A DNA stretch of 62,019 nucleotides, counting the filler, from Sluysia triapertura (Eukaryota), in NCBI GenBank assembly GCA_046118255.1. It is 4 parts of 4 records of this genome, joined end to end, with 100 filler letters (N's around TTAATTAATTAA, not from the genome) between each part and the next. Parts side by side here need not be neighbours in the genome. Positions count along the whole stretch, not along the records: positions 1 to 14,749 come from JBJNIA010249645.1; 3 more parts are not named here. The stretch is one strand, 5' to 3'. The notes under the pieces are model-generated. The model had not been told where the DNA came from. It worked only from the letters and a program-made list of their open reading frames with translations, and ran no database searches. A program made the position numbers and the translations under genes. The first letter of the stretch is position 1. Each line of letters opens with the position of its first letter. Of the stretch, positions 2,370 through 12,381 are shown piece by piece.

Positions 2370-2825
2370 TTACATGATCGCAATTTCCCTTTCTAATTTA
2401 GCTGTTCGTCCACTTTGATTCATTTTGTCTAATTCCTCATTTTCTTGAAGTAACACTCGCATTCTGGTCATCATACGTTTACCAGTTTGACTCTCAGGTG
2501 TAAATTTCCAAGTTTGTAAATCATTTTGAACCTGTTCAAACTTTTCATTTACAGCTTTCATTTCCTTTTTAATCCGTAAAAATACTACATTAACAGCTGG
2601 ATCTAATTCCATACACTTAAAGTGTTGATTACGTGGATTTAACGAAGATTTCATATCATCAATTTGAGCCGAAAGATCAGCAATTTCTTGTTCTTTATGA
2701 GCTAAATTAGCTAAGAAAACATGTTCTAATTTATCTAATTAGCGATTTTTGATTTCAATCTTTTCTTTTAATTTTGTATTCTCTTTCATAAGAGCAATAT
2801 TTTGCTCTTCCAATGATAAATTCAT
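2370..2825 (-). pseudogene. WTAP: WTAP/Fl(2)d (m6A writer complex subunit) intronless truncated copy
   Basis: The translation LAHKEQEI..DPAVNVVFLRIKKEM..QNDLQTWKFTPESQTGKRMM..LLQENEEL..GRTAKLEREIA matches the WTAP core. There is an in-frame TAA at 2739-2741 and a premature TAA at 2370-2372. Confidence 0.85.
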
Positions 2826-4334: not shown

Positions 4335-4800
4335 TCAAAGTAAAACATTTTCCTTTATGTAATGGTCTATCACAAAATTTGCACATATACCGCGTTGCGC
4401 TACGCACTTTGTGTAACGTGCACACACACAATATCGTCTAAGAATATCTTTATTTTTACCGGTGCCTACAATCTTTTCCAAAGTATGTTTCCTCATAACA
4501 GAGAATAGGCGCAAGAACTCACTCATATTCTGTTTTTAAATAAACAATATTTCGCCGCTACCGAACGACCGATAATGTTAATCCACGTCAAAACTAGTAC
4601 TTTACAAAACACATTTATTCAACAAAAATACCGACTGGTTGATACATGATGTATGACGTGACAGCATTCAACATTTCACACTGTTCGCACTGCAAATAGC
4701 AGTTTTAACAGAAATTGCTACTTAAATAAAGCTGAAATAATTCATTCTGCTACAGAATGTCTCAAGATAGTACATTTTACAAACCTTTCTTGCCATTACT
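4335..4800 (-). mobile_element. piggyBac (PGBD4-like) transposase C-terminal remnant
   Basis: RLFSVMRKHTLEKIVGTGKNKDILRRYCVCAR resembles the piggyBac Cys-rich tail. It is disrupted and the boundaries are approximate. Confidence 0.7.
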
Positions 4801-7477: not shown

Positions 7478-10400
7478 TCATTTGTAACACTCCGTCGTAG
7501 TATAAACACTAACGGCAACAGCAGCAACAGCAGCAGTAGTGTTGTGATAAATTTCCGACCGAATACAAGCATTGTAAACTAGAGTAGCCTTAATGCGTTT
7601 TTCATATGAGTTACACAAATAGACGGCTCGACGAAGCACTTGGTCTTGTTGACTGATTGCTGAAGCTACGAGCAGACCCGCTCGACTGTCGATCTTGGCA
7701 CGCAGTTGGCCACTGGCAATAAGTGGACGTAGTTCAAGAATCAGTTCAGGGACGGTTGTATTGAAACAGTGAGCTATTCGGGACAAATGAGCACGATTAT
7801 AAGGACTGAAGTACTGTTTTTAACAAGAAAAGTAATTACATTATATATAACAATAAATATAAAATTCATTATTCTTAAAAAAGCATAAAATGGACTGACC
7901 GGGAATCGAACCCGACAAGTTCTCACTTCACAGTTGTGCAATTCAATGCTATGACCACTGAGCTATAAGCAATTTTGTTTTATCATTGTTCTAAACGACA
8001 CTTTAGGCTTGTAACTCAACATATCTCACCCACTTCAATTATGTTTCACCTCAAACATCTTGAGGATCATTTAATTCAACATCAGAAGAGTATTCGATAT
8101 GCGGGTTCACCAAATGTTAAACATCATGAAATGGACTGACCGGGAATTGAATCCGAAACCTCGCTTCACAGCTATGCAGTTCGATGCTCTGACCACTGAG
8201 CTATCAGTCCTGTCTAACAATTTTGTTTTATTATAGTCAATTATAACCTAACGTATAACACTATATAAATTAAAAAAGCCATTATTTCTAGCATATTAAA
8301 TATAAAAATCTGACATAAACACTGAAAAGTTGTAGTCGAAAACATAAACAAACCTGACAGAGAGCGCGATTTCGAATTTCGCGGAACAAAAACTCAACGT
8401 GATCAGCTAGGTAAATATCCAACAACAATTGATTTTTTAATGAAGCCATACTACGAAGACAATCTGCGTATTGAAAATTGTGGAAACTGTACAGAATATC
8501 ACGAAGACCGGGTTCATTCTCGAGAAACATCTTGAAGTGACTGTTATGAATCACGTTAGCACGCAGTGCGGCTCGATCAAACGACGCTAAAGCACAAATT
8601 GTACCATACAGAGCAACATCGTTGCCCGTGATAACATTTGAGTCTCCCATATGATCATGATCAGCCTAAATTAAATTTAAAAAATTCGATCAAACGCAAT
8701 TTTAATATATTAAGTTATTCATGAACTTTCGAAAAATATTTGTAATAGCAGTATAATTTTATTGTAATTTTTAAATATTCGAAACTATTGTAAACCATGT
8801 TGGTAATTATTCGACCACAATTAAAAACTCGTCTTTGTTGTTATAAACAAAGGTGCAAAGTGGAAGTTTTTCTGAACAAAAATAACTTTAATCAACTAAA
8901 ACTGTTACAAAAGAAAATGAATATTATTGCTAATAACTTTACTAACTTTCACTATATCCATTACATTATAAATTAACTACTTAATTACGATATTTTCCGT
9001 AACCATTTCTTTCTAATTATTCTTTCGAATAATTTCTTTCTTAGTTTTGGACCTTTTAAAGCTTTTTATTCGAAGATATTGAGAACACTAAAATATGTAA
9101 CTTTTTAATAATTTTATTCTTATATAATTGTTAAAATATTTACTTTAAAAAAAAGATTTCAATTACAATTGAAACAGGATCACTGTCACGAGGCTCATGG
9201 AAACATGTTAAACAAACTTATGGTGGCTCAACTTAAGACAAACATGCTGTAATTCACAAAACACATAAGAAAACTCTAACTTGAACCGAAATTCGATTAT
9301 GATCGAATCATCAAATAACACCATAAATAACAAAATAAAAGCCACATGTTTCATTATTTAATGCATTCACTAAATTCGTAAACAGATACAAATATAATGT
9401 GAAAATCTAATTGCTAAGTACAAGAGCACTCATTAATCAGAAAGCATTCAGCAAAATCCTTTATCCTTTTACACATCCTGTGTTTTAAACCGTTAACATT
9501 CAAGCAAGCCGTGTCAGCTTCGATTATAGCATTGTAGTAAACATTTCTGTACTACAATCATCCACAACATTTACATTTCAGACAGATTTTACTTTACACT
9601 TCAACACCAGACCCAAATTTTATTTTTATTTATGCTAAAGATCAAGTATGGATGAGAAAGGATTAGTTTAATATACGAATTAGAGATAACATTAATAATA
9701 AAATAATGATGATAATGATAATAATAATGTAAGGTTTCAATTTTGCAAGTAATTAAGTTTTACAAAATTTAAATAAATGAAATAAGGATTAATAGAATTT
9801 AATAATTGCAACAAAATTGAAAAAAGGACGGAATCCGTGTAGTTAAATTTTGTAAACTCTTATTTCAATTTTGTTATAATTATTAAATTTTATTATTCTT
9901 TATTTCATTTATTGTTAATTTAAAACATATATTTAAATTTTGTAAAACTTAATTATTCTTCTTGCATGGAAATATTGCAAAATTGAAATAAGGTAGAAAA
10001 CCCTATATGATGCCACAGTGGTGTAATAATTAATACATCTTTACGTAACGATTAATAATTATTTCACCTTAATGTTACCACTAAAAATTGTAGTACACTA
10101 GAACTCCCAAAACTGGTACTTTCTCAAACTGGACATCCTCAAAAGGGAACAACTCCCCAAAATGGAACATATTTGTAGCTTATATATTATGATGAAATAA
10201 TTGAAAAAACAGAAACTATGGATCAGGGAAGTAATGATTCCGAAAATAAATCTGAGGATTCTTGTTCAAATGTTCAAAATGAAAATTGTGAACAGATATC
10301 TCATTGGAGGATGCAGAGAAGTCAATGGAGACTGTGCTCAAATTCATAGAGAATAATCCTTGTTTTATAGAAGACTGCCTTATGCAAGCATGTGCATTGC

Positions 10401-12381
10401 AAAGAGAAATAGCTAAGAAGTTTCAAATCCGACAAAATTCCGACCTTCGTAATCTTGTTAAAGGCATTCTAGAAGCAGCCGAGTATCCAACAAATGAGTC
10501 AGTCATTGATAAACTGGAAGAAGGCAGCACAACAGATGAATAAAGATTTTATTTAGTTATCTCATCAACCACACCTGCAAAATTGAATATTAATAAAATT
10601 TGGTTAAGCAGTCAATACTTAAAAGTGTATAAAATGTATGAAATGCATTTATTATCTAATTTTCAATAAGTATTTGTGTGATCATGTATATAGACTTAAA
10701 AAATACACTTGCAAATCTTTTTTTTTAATTAAAACTAACTTCTTTCTGAACTGGAACACTACCAATAACATTCCACTCTAATTTCATCGACGAAAAAGGT
10801 GTTTTATGTATTAATAATATCTTTTAGTATTTTTTTGATGCTTATATATGCTATTTTACTTTTGTTCAGAAAAAATTATTGATGATTATTTTGGCATGGC
10901 AGATTATTCCCATTCTTACATCAATTTATTTATGGATCTTTTATAAAGTTTCAACGGTTCCTTACAATGCTTAATTAAGTTTTAACAGATCTTTACGTAA
11001 AACTGAAAAATGCAACTACTTATACTAGGTATTCTCTTGAAAATCTTTAACCTCACAAAATTATTACTTAATTTTTGTAATATCAAATCATACTTTTAAT
11101 GAAAATTACTAATAAAAATCGAGAATATCAAATAAAACCTGTAAAAATGAACGTGCAGAAGCATTAAAATTGCGATCATGCATCTCCAATAATCCAATCA
11201 CACAATGAATAAACGTTTTCATTTTTAAACGACCCTCTTTTTGATCTGCAGTCAATGGTCTATCTCCTCCATATGAAATTAGAGTTGTCGGTGGTTTGCC
11301 AGGTTCTCCAGTGCTCCCTGAATTGTCAACTGCCGCTGATATCATATTTTGAACACCAGCACCACTACCAACAGTTGTAGTAGCCGTCAAATTATCCAAT
11401 AAAGCTTCAGCTCGATCTACGTAAGAAGCGACATGCCTCCATTGTCCTATAAAGTAATTTAGAAAACTAATAAAGTCATACCTAAATAAATAGAAACTCG
11501 TATCACATTGATCGCCATCATTAATTCATGAGTATCAGTTTTACAATAATCTCTCGATCGTGTATAATTTTTATTAGCACTTAATAAATCTCCAGTATCC
11601 ATATTCACACTTGCTAAATCGTCACATCCACGTCGAATACTTTCGGCCATATTATTGGCTTTGTAATTTTTTAAGTCAGTATCTAATTTGTCAAGAGTTT
11701 GATTAGACAATCGTCTGGTGCGATCTACCCAATCTGAATCAAATTCTAAAATTTGCCCATCTGGTAATCGAATAGGATCATATGATACGCGAGTTTGAAA
11801 TCGTTGGAAATTGAAATCTTCTCGACAACACACACCGGGATTAAGCATTGCTAAAGCTGCATCAGCACTTTCGCGATCTTCACGTACAGTAACACTCTAA
11901 TCATGTGTAATTTTAATACAAAATATATTAGAACAAGATAATCACTTAAGCGAAATAATTCTAATGATTTAAAATGTATAATGAAAACTGATTTAGTAGT
12001 TCGAAAAATGATATAATTATTTTAAATGAAAAATACATAAGAACTAACGATAATGTTGAATACTTTGCAATATTCGACAAAATTCCATGTTGTTTTAAGC
12101 CAATTTAATGCCATTAACAATGCATCTAATCTCAAAGGGCGACAACGGCGTGCAATAAAAATTAATCTTAAATATTTACCAAAATCTTTATAATTATTAA
12201 TATAATTCTCTAAATCCTGAAATCAAAAATTAAAATTCAATAAACGCATAAAATAAAGTAATAAATAAATTAAAAATACTAATGTAGTTTCGGGAACTTC
12301 TTGAGCTGTTGCAGAATGAATAACAGCAACATTCTCATCTTCGTCAATCATATCTAATTGCATGTGTTCAAGAACAGACAT
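7478..12381 (-). CDS. GPS1: COP9 signalosome subunit 1 (CSN1/GPS1), complete 6-exon gene: 12381-12280, 12216-12049, 11896-11482, 11446-11139, 8665-8354, 7813-7478
   Basis: Manual GT-AG splicing gives one phase-consistent ORF from MSVLEHMQLD to TGA. It contains CSN1 motifs DLENYINNY..RLIFIARRC, LDTDLKNYKANNMAESIRRG, YTRSRDYC, DVALYGTICALASFDR, FKMFLENEP, LLLDIYLADHV, IRNRALCQ|YFSPY and GQLRAKIDS (PCI domain). Confidence 0.95.
7873..8253 (-). mobile_element. Miniature non-autonomous LTR retrotransposon (TRIM-like) with tRNA-containing LTRs: 5'LTR 8253-8115, PBS 8112-8101, PPT 8036-8024, 3'LTR 8021-~7873
   Basis: Two direct copies of the tRNA-bearing repeat lie 93 bp apart. On the minus strand, ...TTTAACA is followed by ttTGGTGAACCCGC, and GAAGTGGGTGAGA-ta precedes TGTTGAG. 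The outer ends are decayed. Confidence 0.8.
9735..9989. repeat. Foldback/MITE-like long inverted repeat in CSN1 intron 4
   Basis: Arm ~9735-9826 is the reverse complement, with insertions, of ~9859-9989. The loop contains the small palindrome acggaatccgt. Confidence 0.8.
10095..10780 (+). mobile_element. Tigger/pogo-like transposon remnant
   Basis: An acidic stretch followed by ISLEDAEKSMETVLKFIENN..ALQREIAKK resembles Tigger C-termini. Subrepeats aactgg(a)aca occur at both ends. Confidence 0.5.

What the first reader, a model, noticed from the sequence alone, without database searches (positions are those of the whole stretch)
7873..8253. Complete ~380-bp LTR retrotransposon whose LTRs are built around a tRNA gene
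Seen: two direct copies of a tRNA-bearing repeat separated by 93 bp. On the minus strand the first ends ...TAACA and is followed after 2 nt by TGGTGAACCCGC. The second starts TGTTGAG right after GAAGTGGGTGAGAta. Known: TGG just after the 5' LTR is the primer-binding-site signature; this one differs by one base in 11 from the tRNA-Trp PBS TGGTGACCCCG. A purine tract before the 3' LTR is the PPT. Plant Cassandra TRIMs carry 5S rRNA promoters in their LTRs, and I recall tRNA-bearing analogues ('Ajax') from a dipteran, which should be verified. Inference: this is a non-coding TRIM using an internal Pol III promoter, which would normally be mis-annotated as a SINE or tRNA pseudogene and may be undescribed in this lineage. 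Caveat: the two LTRs are diverged, each has a deletion, and no TSD is clear.
Basis: partly seen in the sequence, partly recalled or inferred. Interest (0 to 1): 0.9.

Follow-up and report, generated by a model that had tools for sequence, protein, structure and literature searches.

The report
Miniature LTR retrotransposon with tRNA-like LTRs
A decayed 388-bp copy of a very abundant miniature LTR retrotransposon, whose two terminal repeats each carry a tRNA-like unit, sits in an intron of a housekeeping gene. Elements of this kind ('Helenus') were first described in 2024, so this is a new family of a known kind, not a new kind.

Summary
On the minus strand, window 8260-7873 reads LTR (146 bp), TT, primer-binding site, 93-bp non-coding core ending in a purine tract, LTR (149 bp). 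Each LTR holds a tRNA-like unit; the 5' one scores 44.8 bits on Rfam tRNA.

The same LTR-93 bp-LTR unit recurs across the genome:
- 1,155 LTR/PBS junctions, 818 PPT/LTR junctions and about 12,500 LTR cores.
- Copies end TG...CA, and 16 of 29 have perfect 4-bp target duplications.
- LTR mates share private variants: 16 of 66 LTRs best match their own mate, against about 1 by chance. This rejects a dimeric SINE and two chance insertions.

The family PBS is the exact complement of the 3' end plus CCA of a host tRNA-Trp isodecoder. Some copies carry 16-18 nt of that tRNA, and one carries 32 nt.

This is therefore a TRIM of the 'Helenus' type (Kojima 2024). The family is absent from the published set, and the host is not a wasp, bivalve or fish.

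Pol III transcription from the A/B boxes is inferred, not shown. One unique locus joins this LTR+PBS to a broken Ty3/Gypsy pol.

Verdict: new member of a known kind, moderate interest.

The parts
7873..8260 (-). Whole element: one decayed copy (388 bp) of a Helenus-type TRIM, belonging to an older subfamily that has about 9 extra bases in the anticodon region
   Evidence: Alignment with 20 other genomic copies plus flanks. It is 76% identical to the majority line of that alignment. The longest stop-free stretch is 56 aa.
8115..8260 (-). 5' LTR (146 bp), TGTTATA...TTTAACA, with an internal deletion in its first third
8132..8210 (-). tRNA-like unit of the 5' LTR. It has a 7-bp acceptor stem, D arm and T arm, and a disrupted, over-long anticodon region
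   Evidence: Rfam RF00005, 44.8 bits, E 6.4e-07. ARAGORN does not call it.
8193..8203 (-). Box A-like motif TAGCTCAGTGG
   Evidence: Read. It is conserved across subfamilies.
8142..8154 (-). Box B region, mutated in this copy (GGATTCAATTCCC). The family form is GGTTCGATCCC
8101..8112 (-). Primer-binding site TGGTGAACCCGC, 2 nt after the LTR end. It matches 10 of 11 positions of the complement of the host tRNA-Trp (L080 type) 3' end plus CCA
   Evidence: The same A variant occurs in L003, so it is a subfamily trait.
8022..8114 (-). Internal region, 93 bp, non-coding, the same length as in the family
   Evidence: BLAST against the L008 internal region: 88% over positions 1-93
8022..8036 (-). Purine-rich tract GAAGTGGGTGAGATA abutting the 3' LTR (family form GAATTGGGTGAGATA)
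7873..8021 (-). 3' LTR (149 bp), TGTTGAG...TTTTAAGA. It has lost about 10 nt that include the 5' acceptor strand of its tRNA-like unit
7891..7968 (-). tRNA-like remnant of the 3' LTR, with intact box A and box B (GGTTCGATTCC, 7912-7902). It is followed by TTTT at 7890-7887
8261..8264 (-). Upstream half of the presumed 4-bp target-site duplication (ATAG)
7869..7872 (-). Downstream half of the presumed target-site duplication (ATAA, matching 3 of 4)
7814..8353 (-). Host intron (540 nt, GT...AG) of a COP9 signalosome subunit 1-like gene. The element lies in it in the sense orientation and fills 72% of it
   Evidence: Flanking reading frames, splice sites read, and PCI/RPN7-domain homologues of the flanking exon

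Best explanation
Window 8260-7873 (minus strand) is an old, dead insertion of a non-autonomous LTR retrotransposon, a TRIM of the 'Helenus'/TRIMp3 kind.

Shown:
- It has two LTRs of about 150 bp ending TG...CA. Each carries a tRNA-like unit with box A and box B, followed by a T run.
- Between the LTRs lies a 93-bp non-coding core. It begins with a PBS for a host tRNA-Trp isodecoder and ends in a purine tract.
- Insertions make 4-bp target duplications.
- Both LTRs of a copy descend from one template.
- Solo LTRs with target duplications exist.

Inferred life cycle:
- RNA polymerase III starts at the tRNA-like unit of the 5' LTR and reads through the weak T4 stop there. It ends at the same T run in the 3' LTR, so the tRNA-like unit serves as the repeated R region.
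- The RNA is packaged by the proteins of a Ty3/Gypsy element.
- tRNA-Trp primes minus-strand synthesis and the purine tract primes plus-strand synthesis.
- The Gypsy integrase inserts the copy.

I hold the TRIM identity at above 0.95. The confidence given here is for the whole statement, including Pol III transcription and Gypsy mobilisation.
For: Structure is repeated genome-wide.
- Searches show LTR, a 93-bp internal region and LTR in nearly every fetched locus.
- The LTR/PBS junction occurs 1,155 times (control 9).
- The PPT/LTR junction occurs 818 times (control 0).
- The LTR core 26-mer occurs 12,565 times (control 0).

Target duplications.
- 16 of 29 copies have perfect 4-bp duplications and 6 more match 3 of 4. 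The next four bases outward never match perfectly.
- One solo LTR has a clear 4-bp duplication (L043, TATG) and a second a probable one (L095, ATAA).

LTR mates.
- 16 of 66 LTRs have their own mate as best match, against about 1 by chance.
- Mean identity is 0.886 between mates and 0.860 between non-mates.
- 5'-5', 3'-3' and 5'-3' non-mate identities are equal (0.857, 0.865, 0.860). There are no fixed 'left monomer' and 'right monomer' forms.

Primer.
- The host tRNA-Trp(CCA) gene at L080:1475-1547 ends ...CGGGCTCA. With CCA added, this is the exact complement of the family PBS.
- The 16-mer TGGTGAGCCCGACGTG occurs 9 times exactly, against 1 for the control. All 9 exact hits were fetched, together with six 1-mismatch hits. 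All 15 sit 2 nt behind this tRNA-bearing LTR, except L096, where the last bases of the LTR are missing.
- L093 carries a 32-nt copy of that tRNA's 3' part. In the whole assembly its 21-mer occurs only in the tRNA gene and in L093.

tRNA-like unit.
- Rfam scores it at 34-50 bits in several copies.
- Box A, box B, the 3' acceptor strand and the T run are the best conserved LTR parts across subfamilies.
- 55 of 61 T4 runs in 33 copies lie at that one LTR site, against 208 A4 runs.

Gypsy link.
- 4-bp duplications and Gypsy-type tRNA PBSs are what Kojima 2024 reports for animal Helenus.
- In L094 the LTR+PBS is joined directly to RVT_1, RT_RNaseH_2 and Integrase_H2C2 reading frames.
Against: - No RNA evidence exists. 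The two runs holding this DNA are not recorded as RNA, so Pol III use is untested.
- A T4 run follows the tRNA-like unit in the 5' LTR as well. A Pol III genomic RNA would need to read through it.
- With one master sequence behind all copies, the lack of other T4 runs is only weakly significant.
- No intact autonomous partner sharing PBS and LTR ends was found.
- The LTR-PBS-pol junction of L094 is unique in the genome and its pol is frameshifted and rearranged. It may be a local accident.
- The modal PBS matches the tRNA over only 10-11 nt.
- All sampled copies are old, with mate LTRs 81-95% identical. The family may be extinct.
Confidence: 0.65

Rival explanations
1. It is the same TRIM, but the tRNA-like unit is a passenger, for example an old SINE or tRNA retrocopy caught in an ancestral LTR. 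The genomic RNA would then be made by RNA polymerase II from a conventional LTR promoter, or by read-through from host genes. The Pol III boxes would yield at most short tRNA-sized RNAs.
For: - A T4 terminator follows the tRNA-like unit directly in both LTRs, in 56 of 66 LTRs. It would stop much of any Pol III transcription after about 75 nt.
- In one locus the same LTR is joined to several kilobases of Gypsy pol (L094). That length is thought too long for Pol III (Kojima 2024).
- The window copy itself lies in the sense orientation in a Pol II intron.
Against: - The tRNA-like core, including boxes A and B, is the most conserved LTR segment between subfamiles that otherwise differ strongly in the upstream third of the LTR.
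- The sense strand has almost no other T4 runs despite 28% T.
- The element is short (about 405 bp), as in other TRIMp3 families.
- In the related plant group Cassandra, Pol III transcripts are reported (Kojima 2024).
Confidence: 0.28
2. It is a dimeric tRNA-derived SINE, or a short tandem array: a head-to-tail duplicate of a SINE that formed once and then spread by LINE machinery.
For: There are two tRNA-like heads in tandem. tRNA-derived SINEs are common, and ARAGORN and Rfam partly see a tRNA.
Against: - The unit starts 66 nt upstream of the tRNA-like part with TG and ends CA.
- Target duplications have a fixed 4-bp length and there is no A-rich or LINE-like tail.
- The left and right repeats of a copy resemble each other more than they resemble other left or right repeats, and no fixed left/right differences exist.
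- The PBS matches a host tRNA plus CCA, with 16-32-nt copies of that tRNA.
- One solo LTR has a clear target duplication and a second a probable one.
Confidence: 0.02
3. Two independent neighbouring insertions of a tRNA-like repeat, with a chance TGG and a chance purine run between them.
For: The two window repeats are only 78% alike and each has a deletion.
Against: - The 93-bp spacer is itself a high-copy sequence. It was flanked by the repeat in nearly every fetched locus, the exceptions being truncated copies.
- The junction 19-mers occur 1,155 and 818 times.
Confidence: 0.01
4. A pair of real tRNA genes or tRNA pseudogenes of the host.
For: Rfam tRNA hit above the gathering score.
Against: - ARAGORN finds no tRNA in the window.
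- In 66 family LTRs ARAGORN, of which 19 have no assignable anticodon.
- The anticodon arm is disrupted or over-long.
- About 12,500 copies sit in an LTR context.
Confidence: 0.01

Closest known systems
Helenus (TRIMs with a tRNA-derived sequence in the LTRs; part of 'TRIMp3'; Kojima 2024, Biology 13:119, PMC10886601)
   Same: - Two short LTRs, each with a tRNA-like unit keeping box A and box B.
- The unit is not a usable tRNA.
- A short non-coding core with a PBS for the 3' end of a tRNA, and a purine tract.
- 4-bp target duplications, as in all animal Helenus.
- Total length (about 405 bp) inside the published 311-1,263 bp range.
- Excess of LTRs over internal parts.
- tRNA-Trp is one of the primers reported for hymenopteran Helenus.
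   Different: - There is no sequence match to the published families. The PBS, junction and LTR-end motifs are absent from the paper's DataS1.
- The wasp families are GC-rich, end TGTAACG...CCGTTACA and have internal parts of several hundred bp.
- The PBS fits a lineage-specific tRNA-Trp isodecoder with G3:C70.
- The host is an unidentified AT-rich animal (28% GC) on a long branch, not a wasp, bivalve or fish.
- LTR core count is very high, at about 12,500.
- One locus links the LTR+PBS to Gypsy pol, which the paper considered unlikely.
Cassandra (plant TRIM with 5S rRNA-derived LTR sequence) and Ajax (nemertean TRIM with 5S promoter)
   Same: The design is the same: a small Pol III-type gene fragment inside both LTRs of a TRIM.
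   Different: They carry 5S rRNA-derived sequence, not tRNA-derived sequence, and make 5-bp target duplications.
PbTRIM of ants (Zhou and Cahan 2012, PMC3532108)
   Same: It is an animal TRIM with 4-bp target duplications, often ATAT, inserted in AT-rich DNA, with many solo LTRs and copies in or near genes.
   Different: PbTRIM is 480-781 bp, uses a tRNA-Leu PBS, and no tRNA-like unit is reported in its LTRs.
tRNA-derived SINEs (SINE2)
   Same: A tRNA-like head with boxes A and B, very high copy number, and easily mis-annotated as tRNA pseudogenes.
   Different: SINEs start at the tRNA-like head, end in a LINE-like or A-rich tail, are copied by LINE machinery, and have target duplications of variable length. 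None of this holds here.

Membership tests
Helenus / TRIMp3 | Two direct terminal repeats (LTRs) flanking a short non-coding internal part | tested here: met
   In the window, 146-bp and 149-bp LTRs flank 93 bp. The same layout is seen in the other fetched full copies. There is no long reading frame.
Helenus / TRIMp3 | tRNA-derived sequence with conserved box A and box B inside the LTR | tested here: met
   Rfam tRNA scores of 34-50 bits in the window and in L008, L048, L095 and L100. TAGCTCAGTGG and GGTTCGATCCC are conserved across subfamilies.
Helenus / TRIMp3 | PBS just downstream of the 5' LTR, complementary to a tRNA | tested here: met
   The family PBS is the complement of the host tRNA-Trp (L080) 3' end plus CCA over 10-11 nt. 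The match runs 16-18 nt in a subfamily and 32 nt in L093.
Helenus / TRIMp3 | Polypurine tract just upstream of the 3' LTR | tested here: met
   GAATTGGGTGAGATA (11 of 15 purines) abuts the LTR start. The junction 19-mer occurs 818 times against a control of 0. It is purine-rich rather than pure.
Helenus / TRIMp3 | 4-bp target-site duplications (animal Helenus) | tested here: met
   16 of 29 perfect and 6 more at 3 of 4, against 0 perfect in the control. In the window copy 3 of 4 match.
Helenus / TRIMp3 | Transcription from the internal Pol III promoter | not testable with these tools
   No RNA run holds the locus. The only evidence is indirect: conservation of the boxes and scarcity of T4 runs.
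Helenus / TRIMp3 | Mobilised by an autonomous LTR retrotransposon (Gypsy in animals) | tested here: inconclusive
   The 4-bp duplications fit. One unique junction joins the LTR+PBS to a broken Gypsy pol (L094). No intact partner with the same PBS and ends could be fetched.
LTR retrotransposon (any) | Both LTRs of one insertion derive from one template, so mates share variants | tested here: met
   16 of 66 LTRs best match their own mate (chance about 1). Mates are 0.886 identical against 0.860 for non-mates.
tRNA-derived SINE (SINE2) | Element begins at the tRNA-like head and ends in an A-rich or LINE-derived tail, with variable-length target duplications | tested here: not met
   The unit starts 66 nt upstream of the tRNA-like part, ends ...CTAACA, and has fixed 4-bp duplications.
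Ajax / Cassandra | 5S rRNA-derived sequence in the LTR | tested here: not met
   The only Rfam match in the window above its family's gathering score is tRNA. There is no 5S match.
Functional tRNA gene | Canonical cloverleaf with a 7-nt anticodon loop and assignable anticodon | tested here: not met
   ARAGORN finds none in the window. Of 25 calls in 66 LTRs, 19 have no anticodon. Rfam alignments show 10-18 nt in place of the anticodon loop.

The most novel reading that the evidence does not exclude
The tRNA-bearing LTR is not confined to the miniature element. It is, or was, also the LTR of a coding Ty3/Gypsy retrotransposon primed by the same tRNA-Trp isodecoder. The TRIM would then have arisen by internal deletion of an autonomous element that already carried a Pol III-type tRNA-like unit in its LTRs.

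This would contradict the published expectation that TRIMp3 elements and their autonomous partners cannot share LTRs. It would also extend Helenus to a poorly sampled, fast-evolving animal lineage.

A related reading covers the ten of the fifteen LTR+PBS copies examined that run into unrelated DNA 15-22 nt after the PBS start. They may be fossils of plus-strand strong-stop DNA that failed its second transfer.
Probability: 0.12. Interest if true: 0.7.

Novelty: new member of a known kind. Interest (0 to 1): 0.35.

Why it matters
- About 12,500 tRNA-like LTR cores in a 619-Mb genome will be mis-annotated as tRNA genes, tRNA pseudogenes or SINEs unless the LTR context is recognised. The same problem was shown for rust fungi, where Helenus inflates tRNA gene counts.
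- The family is a clean natural record of LTR reverse transcription. Its PBS matches one particular host tRNA-Trp isodecoder, and one copy kept 32 nt of the primer.
- It adds a Helenus-type family outside the wasps, bivalves and fishes where such elements were described. That supports the view that Pol III-type TRIMs arise repeatedly.
- If the single link to a Gypsy pol reflects the real partner, this genome would be a good place to ask how such elements are transcribed and packaged.

Tried and rejected
1. **Host tRNA with the modal PBS ending.** A search for a host tRNA ending TGGGCTCA, taken from the modal PBS with A at position 11, gave nothing. The true tRNA ends CGGGCTCA. It was found through its anticodon arm.

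2. **False tRNA-Trp lead.** A first 'tRNA-Trp 3' end' hit (L065) proved to be the PBS of another retroelement, not a tRNA gene.

3. **Naming the host.** All attempts failed.
   - Sequencing-run names are coded.
   - An exon search found nothing.
   - The Atlas search was uninformative.
   - The exact look-up was blank.
   - The nearest CSN1 relative (74% over one exon) is unnamed, and its best named relatives are only 35-40% identical across all animal phyla.
   - The Gypsy RT search returned almost only unnamed proteins; the one named hit was a fungus.

4. **Autonomous partner.** Contigs with long Gypsy reading frames, for example one of 1,661 aa, could not be fetched. I did not try to read them by another route.

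5. **L094 junction as an amplified family.** Rejected, because the junction occurs once.

6. **LTR+PBS as a mobile unit of its own.** Rejected, because no target duplications flank such units.

7. **A free SINE with the same head.** None was seen in 232 kb of sampled loci. This sample is small and biased.

8. **Orthologous insertion in a second organism.** The second run's coverage was too thin to tell.

10. **Majority line.** In one search I computed a majority line of the 21-copy alignment of this non-coding element, only to measure divergence. In view of the tools' notice on consensus building I deleted it. I worked from natural copies, with L008 as reference, and do not reproduce the line here.
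Full report
**What is in the window**

Read on the minus strand, 8260-7873 has five parts.
- A 146-bp repeat (8260-8115) running from TGTTATA to TTTAACA.
- The dinucleotide TT.
- TGGTGAACCCGC (8112-8101).
- The rest of a 93-bp spacer (8114-8022), which ends in GAAGTGGGTGAGATA.
- A 149-bp repeat (8021-7873) running from TGTTGAG to TTTTAAGA.

The two repeats are 77.9% identical over 136 aligned columns, and each has its own deletions.

The 5' repeat holds a complete tRNA-like unit (8210-8132; Rfam tRNA 44.8 bits against a gathering score of 29). The 3' repeat has lost the 5' acceptor strand of its unit. ARAGORN calls no tRNA in the window.

Two small corrections apply: the 5' end is at 8260 rather than 8253, and the 3' repeat starts at 8021.

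The element lies in the sense orientation inside a 540-nt GT...AG intron (8353-7814). The intron belongs to a COP9 signalosome subunit 1-like gene, and the element fills 72% of it.

**It is one copy of a large family with a fixed architecture**

A search of the window's own genome (619 Mb, 263,945 contigs) with the element gave 5,243 first-look candidates. Most scored matches covered the whole repeat-spacer-repeat unit. A second search with a better preserved copy gave 6,319 candidates.

An alignment of 21 copies with flanks shows the common plan.
- LTRs of about 155 bp begin TGTTGGGG and end GTCTAACA.
- TT follows, then TGGTGAGCCCACATATCG.
- The core is 93 bp and ends GGGTGAGATA, directly before the next TGTTGGGG.

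BLAST of one natural LTR and one natural core (from L008) against all loci gives the order LTR, core (positions 1-93), LTR in nearly every locus.

Whole-genome pattern counts:

| Pattern | Mismatches allowed | Matches | Reversed control |
|---|---|---|---|
| LTR-end/PBS 19-mer | up to 2 | 1,155 | 9 |
| Purine-tract/LTR-start 19-mer | up to 2 | 818 | 0 |
| LTR core 26-mer (box B to T run) | up to 3 | 12,565 | 0 |

LTR cores outnumber internal parts about tenfold. This fits three observations.
- Sampled flanks contain solo LTRs and LTR fragments.
- One solo LTR carries a clear 4-bp duplication (TATG in L043) and a second a probable one (ATAA in L095).
- Contigs of the source run pile up far more on the LTR parts than on the core. 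That table is not a copy number.

**LTR retrotransposon, not SINE dimer and not chance**

Three independent tests agree.

1. Target sites. Of 29 copies with clean ends, 16 have a perfect 4-bp duplication and 6 more match 3 of 4. The next four bases outward never match perfectly.

2. LTR mates. In 33 full copies, 16 of 66 LTRs have their own mate as nearest relative, where about 1 is expected. Mates average 0.886 identity against 0.860 for non-mates. Left-left, right-right and left-right non-mate identities are equal at 0.857, 0.865 and 0.860. A dimer that formed once and then spread would show fixed left and right forms. Regeneration of both LTRs from one template at each cycle gives the pattern seen.

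3. The primer site (next section).

**The primer is a particular host tRNA-Trp**

The genome holds three tRNA-Trp(CCA) isodecoders with different acceptor stems (L078, L079, L080).

The one at L080:1475-1547 ends ...CACGTCGGGCTCA. With CCA added, its complement begins TGGTGAGCCCG, which is the family's PBS.

The window copy and L003 share a further G-to-A change at that position. It is therefore a trait of their older subfamily.

A search for the 16-mer TGGTGAGCCCGACGTG found 9 exact matches, against 1 for the control, and about 20 more matches with one mismatch, roughly half of them the canonical-Trp form. All 9 exact hits and six 1-mismatch hits were fetched. All 15 lie 2 nt behind this same tRNA-bearing LTR, except L096, where the last bases of the LTR are missing. 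Five of them continue into the normal core with a full 15-18-nt PBS.

L093 carries 32 nt complementary to the tRNA, reaching into its T arm. The corresponding 21-mer occurs in the whole assembly only in the tRNA gene and in L093. The simplest reading is that reverse transcriptase copied further than usual into the primer. That would be direct evidence that this tRNA primed the element.

**The tRNA-like unit**

Rfam scores it at 34-50 bits in several copies. The acceptor stem, D arm and T arm are intact. The anticodon region is disrupted or 10-18 nt long.

ARAGORN of 66 LTRs, 19 of them without an anticodon. It is therefore not a usable tRNA. The PBS is not complementary to it.

Across subfamilies that differ strongly in the first third of the LTR, four parts are the best conserved: box A (TAGCTCAGTGG), box B (GGTTCGATCCC), the 3' acceptor strand and the following T run.

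In 33 copies, 55 of 61 runs of four or more T lie at that single LTR site. There are 208 A4 runs. Since all copies descend from few masters this is weak statistics, but it is what a Pol III template would look like.

**Comparison with what is known**

Kojima (2024, PMC10886601) described exactly this design as 'Helenus': TRIMs with a tRNA-derived sequence in the LTRs.
- They are found in fungi, one plant and six animal phyla.
- Animal families make 4-bp duplications and have Gypsy-type PBSs, tRNA-Trp among them.
- With Cassandra, these groups are termed TRIMp3.

The present family meets every structural criterion of Helenus. Pol III transcription is unproven here, as it is for Helenus in general.

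Its PBS, junction and LTR-end motifs are absent from the paper's sequence file. The wasp families look quite different: GC-rich, with TGTAACG...CCGTTACA ends and long internal parts. PbTRIM of ants differs in size and primer.

**The host**

I could not name the host. Its DNA is 28% G+C in this window.

The CSN1-like exon next to the element is 74% identical to one unnamed protein and at most 57% identical to named ones. That unnamed relative is only 35-40% identical to CSN1 of molluscs, annelids, arthropods, echinoderms and vertebrates alike.

The host is thus an animal on a long, poorly sampled branch. It is not one of the wasps, bivalves or fishes with published Helenus families.

A second, coded organism also holds the family.

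**Age**

Mate LTRs of the main subfamily are 81-95% identical, with a mean of 88.6% and a Jukes-Cantor distance of 0.12. Those of the window copy are 78% identical.

With no rate known for this host, these figures only say that all sampled insertions are old and that the window copy is among the oldest. No near-identical pair was seen among the copies sampled.

**The partner, and an unexpected junction**

In L094 (contig C158735, minus strand) the end of this LTR and a 16-nt perfect PBS are followed at once by a reading frame that matches Pfam RVT_1 from its third position. After it come frameshifted RT, RT_RNaseH_2, Integrase_H2C2 and an integrase C-terminus. Then, out of the usual order, comes an aspartyl protease.

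Gag and a 3' LTR are absent from the 5.5-kb contig. I only describe these breaks.

RT relatives are abundant, with 2,966 first-look candidates, and some have long open frames. The junction itself, however, occurs once in the genome.

It is therefore either a recombinant made during reverse transcription in a particle shared with that Gypsy family, or a local deletion. It is not an amplified element. It is the only physical link to a partner, and I rate it as a lead.

**Mechanism and odds**

Shown:
- the architecture;
- 4-bp duplications;
- common descent of mate LTRs;
- a solo LTR with a target duplication;
- the PBS matching a specific host tRNA, including primer-derived extensions.

Inferred:
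- Pol III starts at the tRNA-like unit of the 5' LTR, partly reads through its T4 run, and stops at the T run of the 3' LTR. This makes the tRNA-like unit the R region, with about 66 nt of U3 and about 13 nt of U5.
- Gypsy proteins package, copy and integrate the RNA.

I put the TRIM/Helenus identity above 0.95 and the full mechanism at about 0.65. The variant with Pol II transcription and a passenger tRNA-like unit stands at about 0.28.

**Verdict**

The kind of element has been known since 2024.

This is a new, very abundant family of that kind in an unsampled host. Two details deserve follow-up: the primer read-through copy and the LTR-PBS-pol junction.

Noticed in passing
L093 (G000:C178197, minus strand; PBS starts at contig position 4764): One family copy has 32 nt complementary to the 3' part of the host tRNA-Trp (through the T loop) in place of the usual PBS, and then continues into the normal core. 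It looks like read-through of the primer during plus-strand strong-stop synthesis.
   Followed up: partly
L094 = G000:C158735:1-5554, minus strand; LTR 5553-5490, PBS 5487-5472, pol 5471-3295, protease frame 3291-2686: The tRNA-bearing LTR and a perfect 16-nt PBS are joined directly to a broken Ty3/Gypsy pol (RT, RNase H, integrase), followed by a protease frame out of order. The junction is unique in the genome.
   Followed up: partly
L091, L095, L096, L097, L098, L099, L100, L101, L103: In nine more of the fifteen LTR copies with a perfect long PBS, the sequence turns into unrelated DNA 15-22 nt after the PBS start. The unrelated DNA includes another repeat, a TA microsatellite and a host-like exon. 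No target duplication flanks the LTR+PBS unit. The breakpoints cluster at the end of the tRNA-complementary stretch. This is unexplained.
   Followed up: partly
L095:357-959 and L101:354-906; also L098, L091, L009, L021, L028, L035: A separate interspersed repeat of about 600 bp lies right behind the PBS in two LTR copies, in opposite orientations. It also occurs within about 1 kb of several other family copies.
   Followed up: no
L008:364-410 and L058:277-325: Two loci share a different upstream sequence fused to only the 3' half of the LTR, from the anticodon region to the LTR end. This suggests another repeat family that captured part of this LTR.
   Followed up: no
L065:380-415 (G000:C118396): A different, GC-richer retroelement carries a 24-nt PBS for the canonical tRNA-Trp (TGGTGACCCCGACGTG...) with no tRNA-like unit upstream. 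Nine such PBS matches exist in the genome.
   Followed up: no
L078:609-682, L079:208-280, L080:1475-1547: The host has three tRNA-Trp(CCA) isodecoders that differ in the acceptor stem. The one used by this family (G3:C70) is single-copy in the assembly.
   Followed up: yes
L003:1531-1709: A 5'-truncated copy at another locus is 93% identical to the window copy. It shares the window copy's unusual LTR end (GATGTTTAACA) and its PBS variant (TGGTGAACCC). These are therefore subfamily traits, not private decay.
   Followed up: partly
window 2370-2654 (minus) and 11109-11848 (minus): Other host exons lie in the window. One is a WTAP/Fl(2)d-like coiled-coil frame. Others are further exons of the CSN1-like gene, which is unusually divergent from all named animal orthologues.
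   Followed up: partly
L060:325-481: tRNA-His and tRNA-Glu genes lie only 10 bp apart on a 1.2-kb contig. L087 holds an Arg-His-Glu-Arg tRNA cluster.
   Followed up: no
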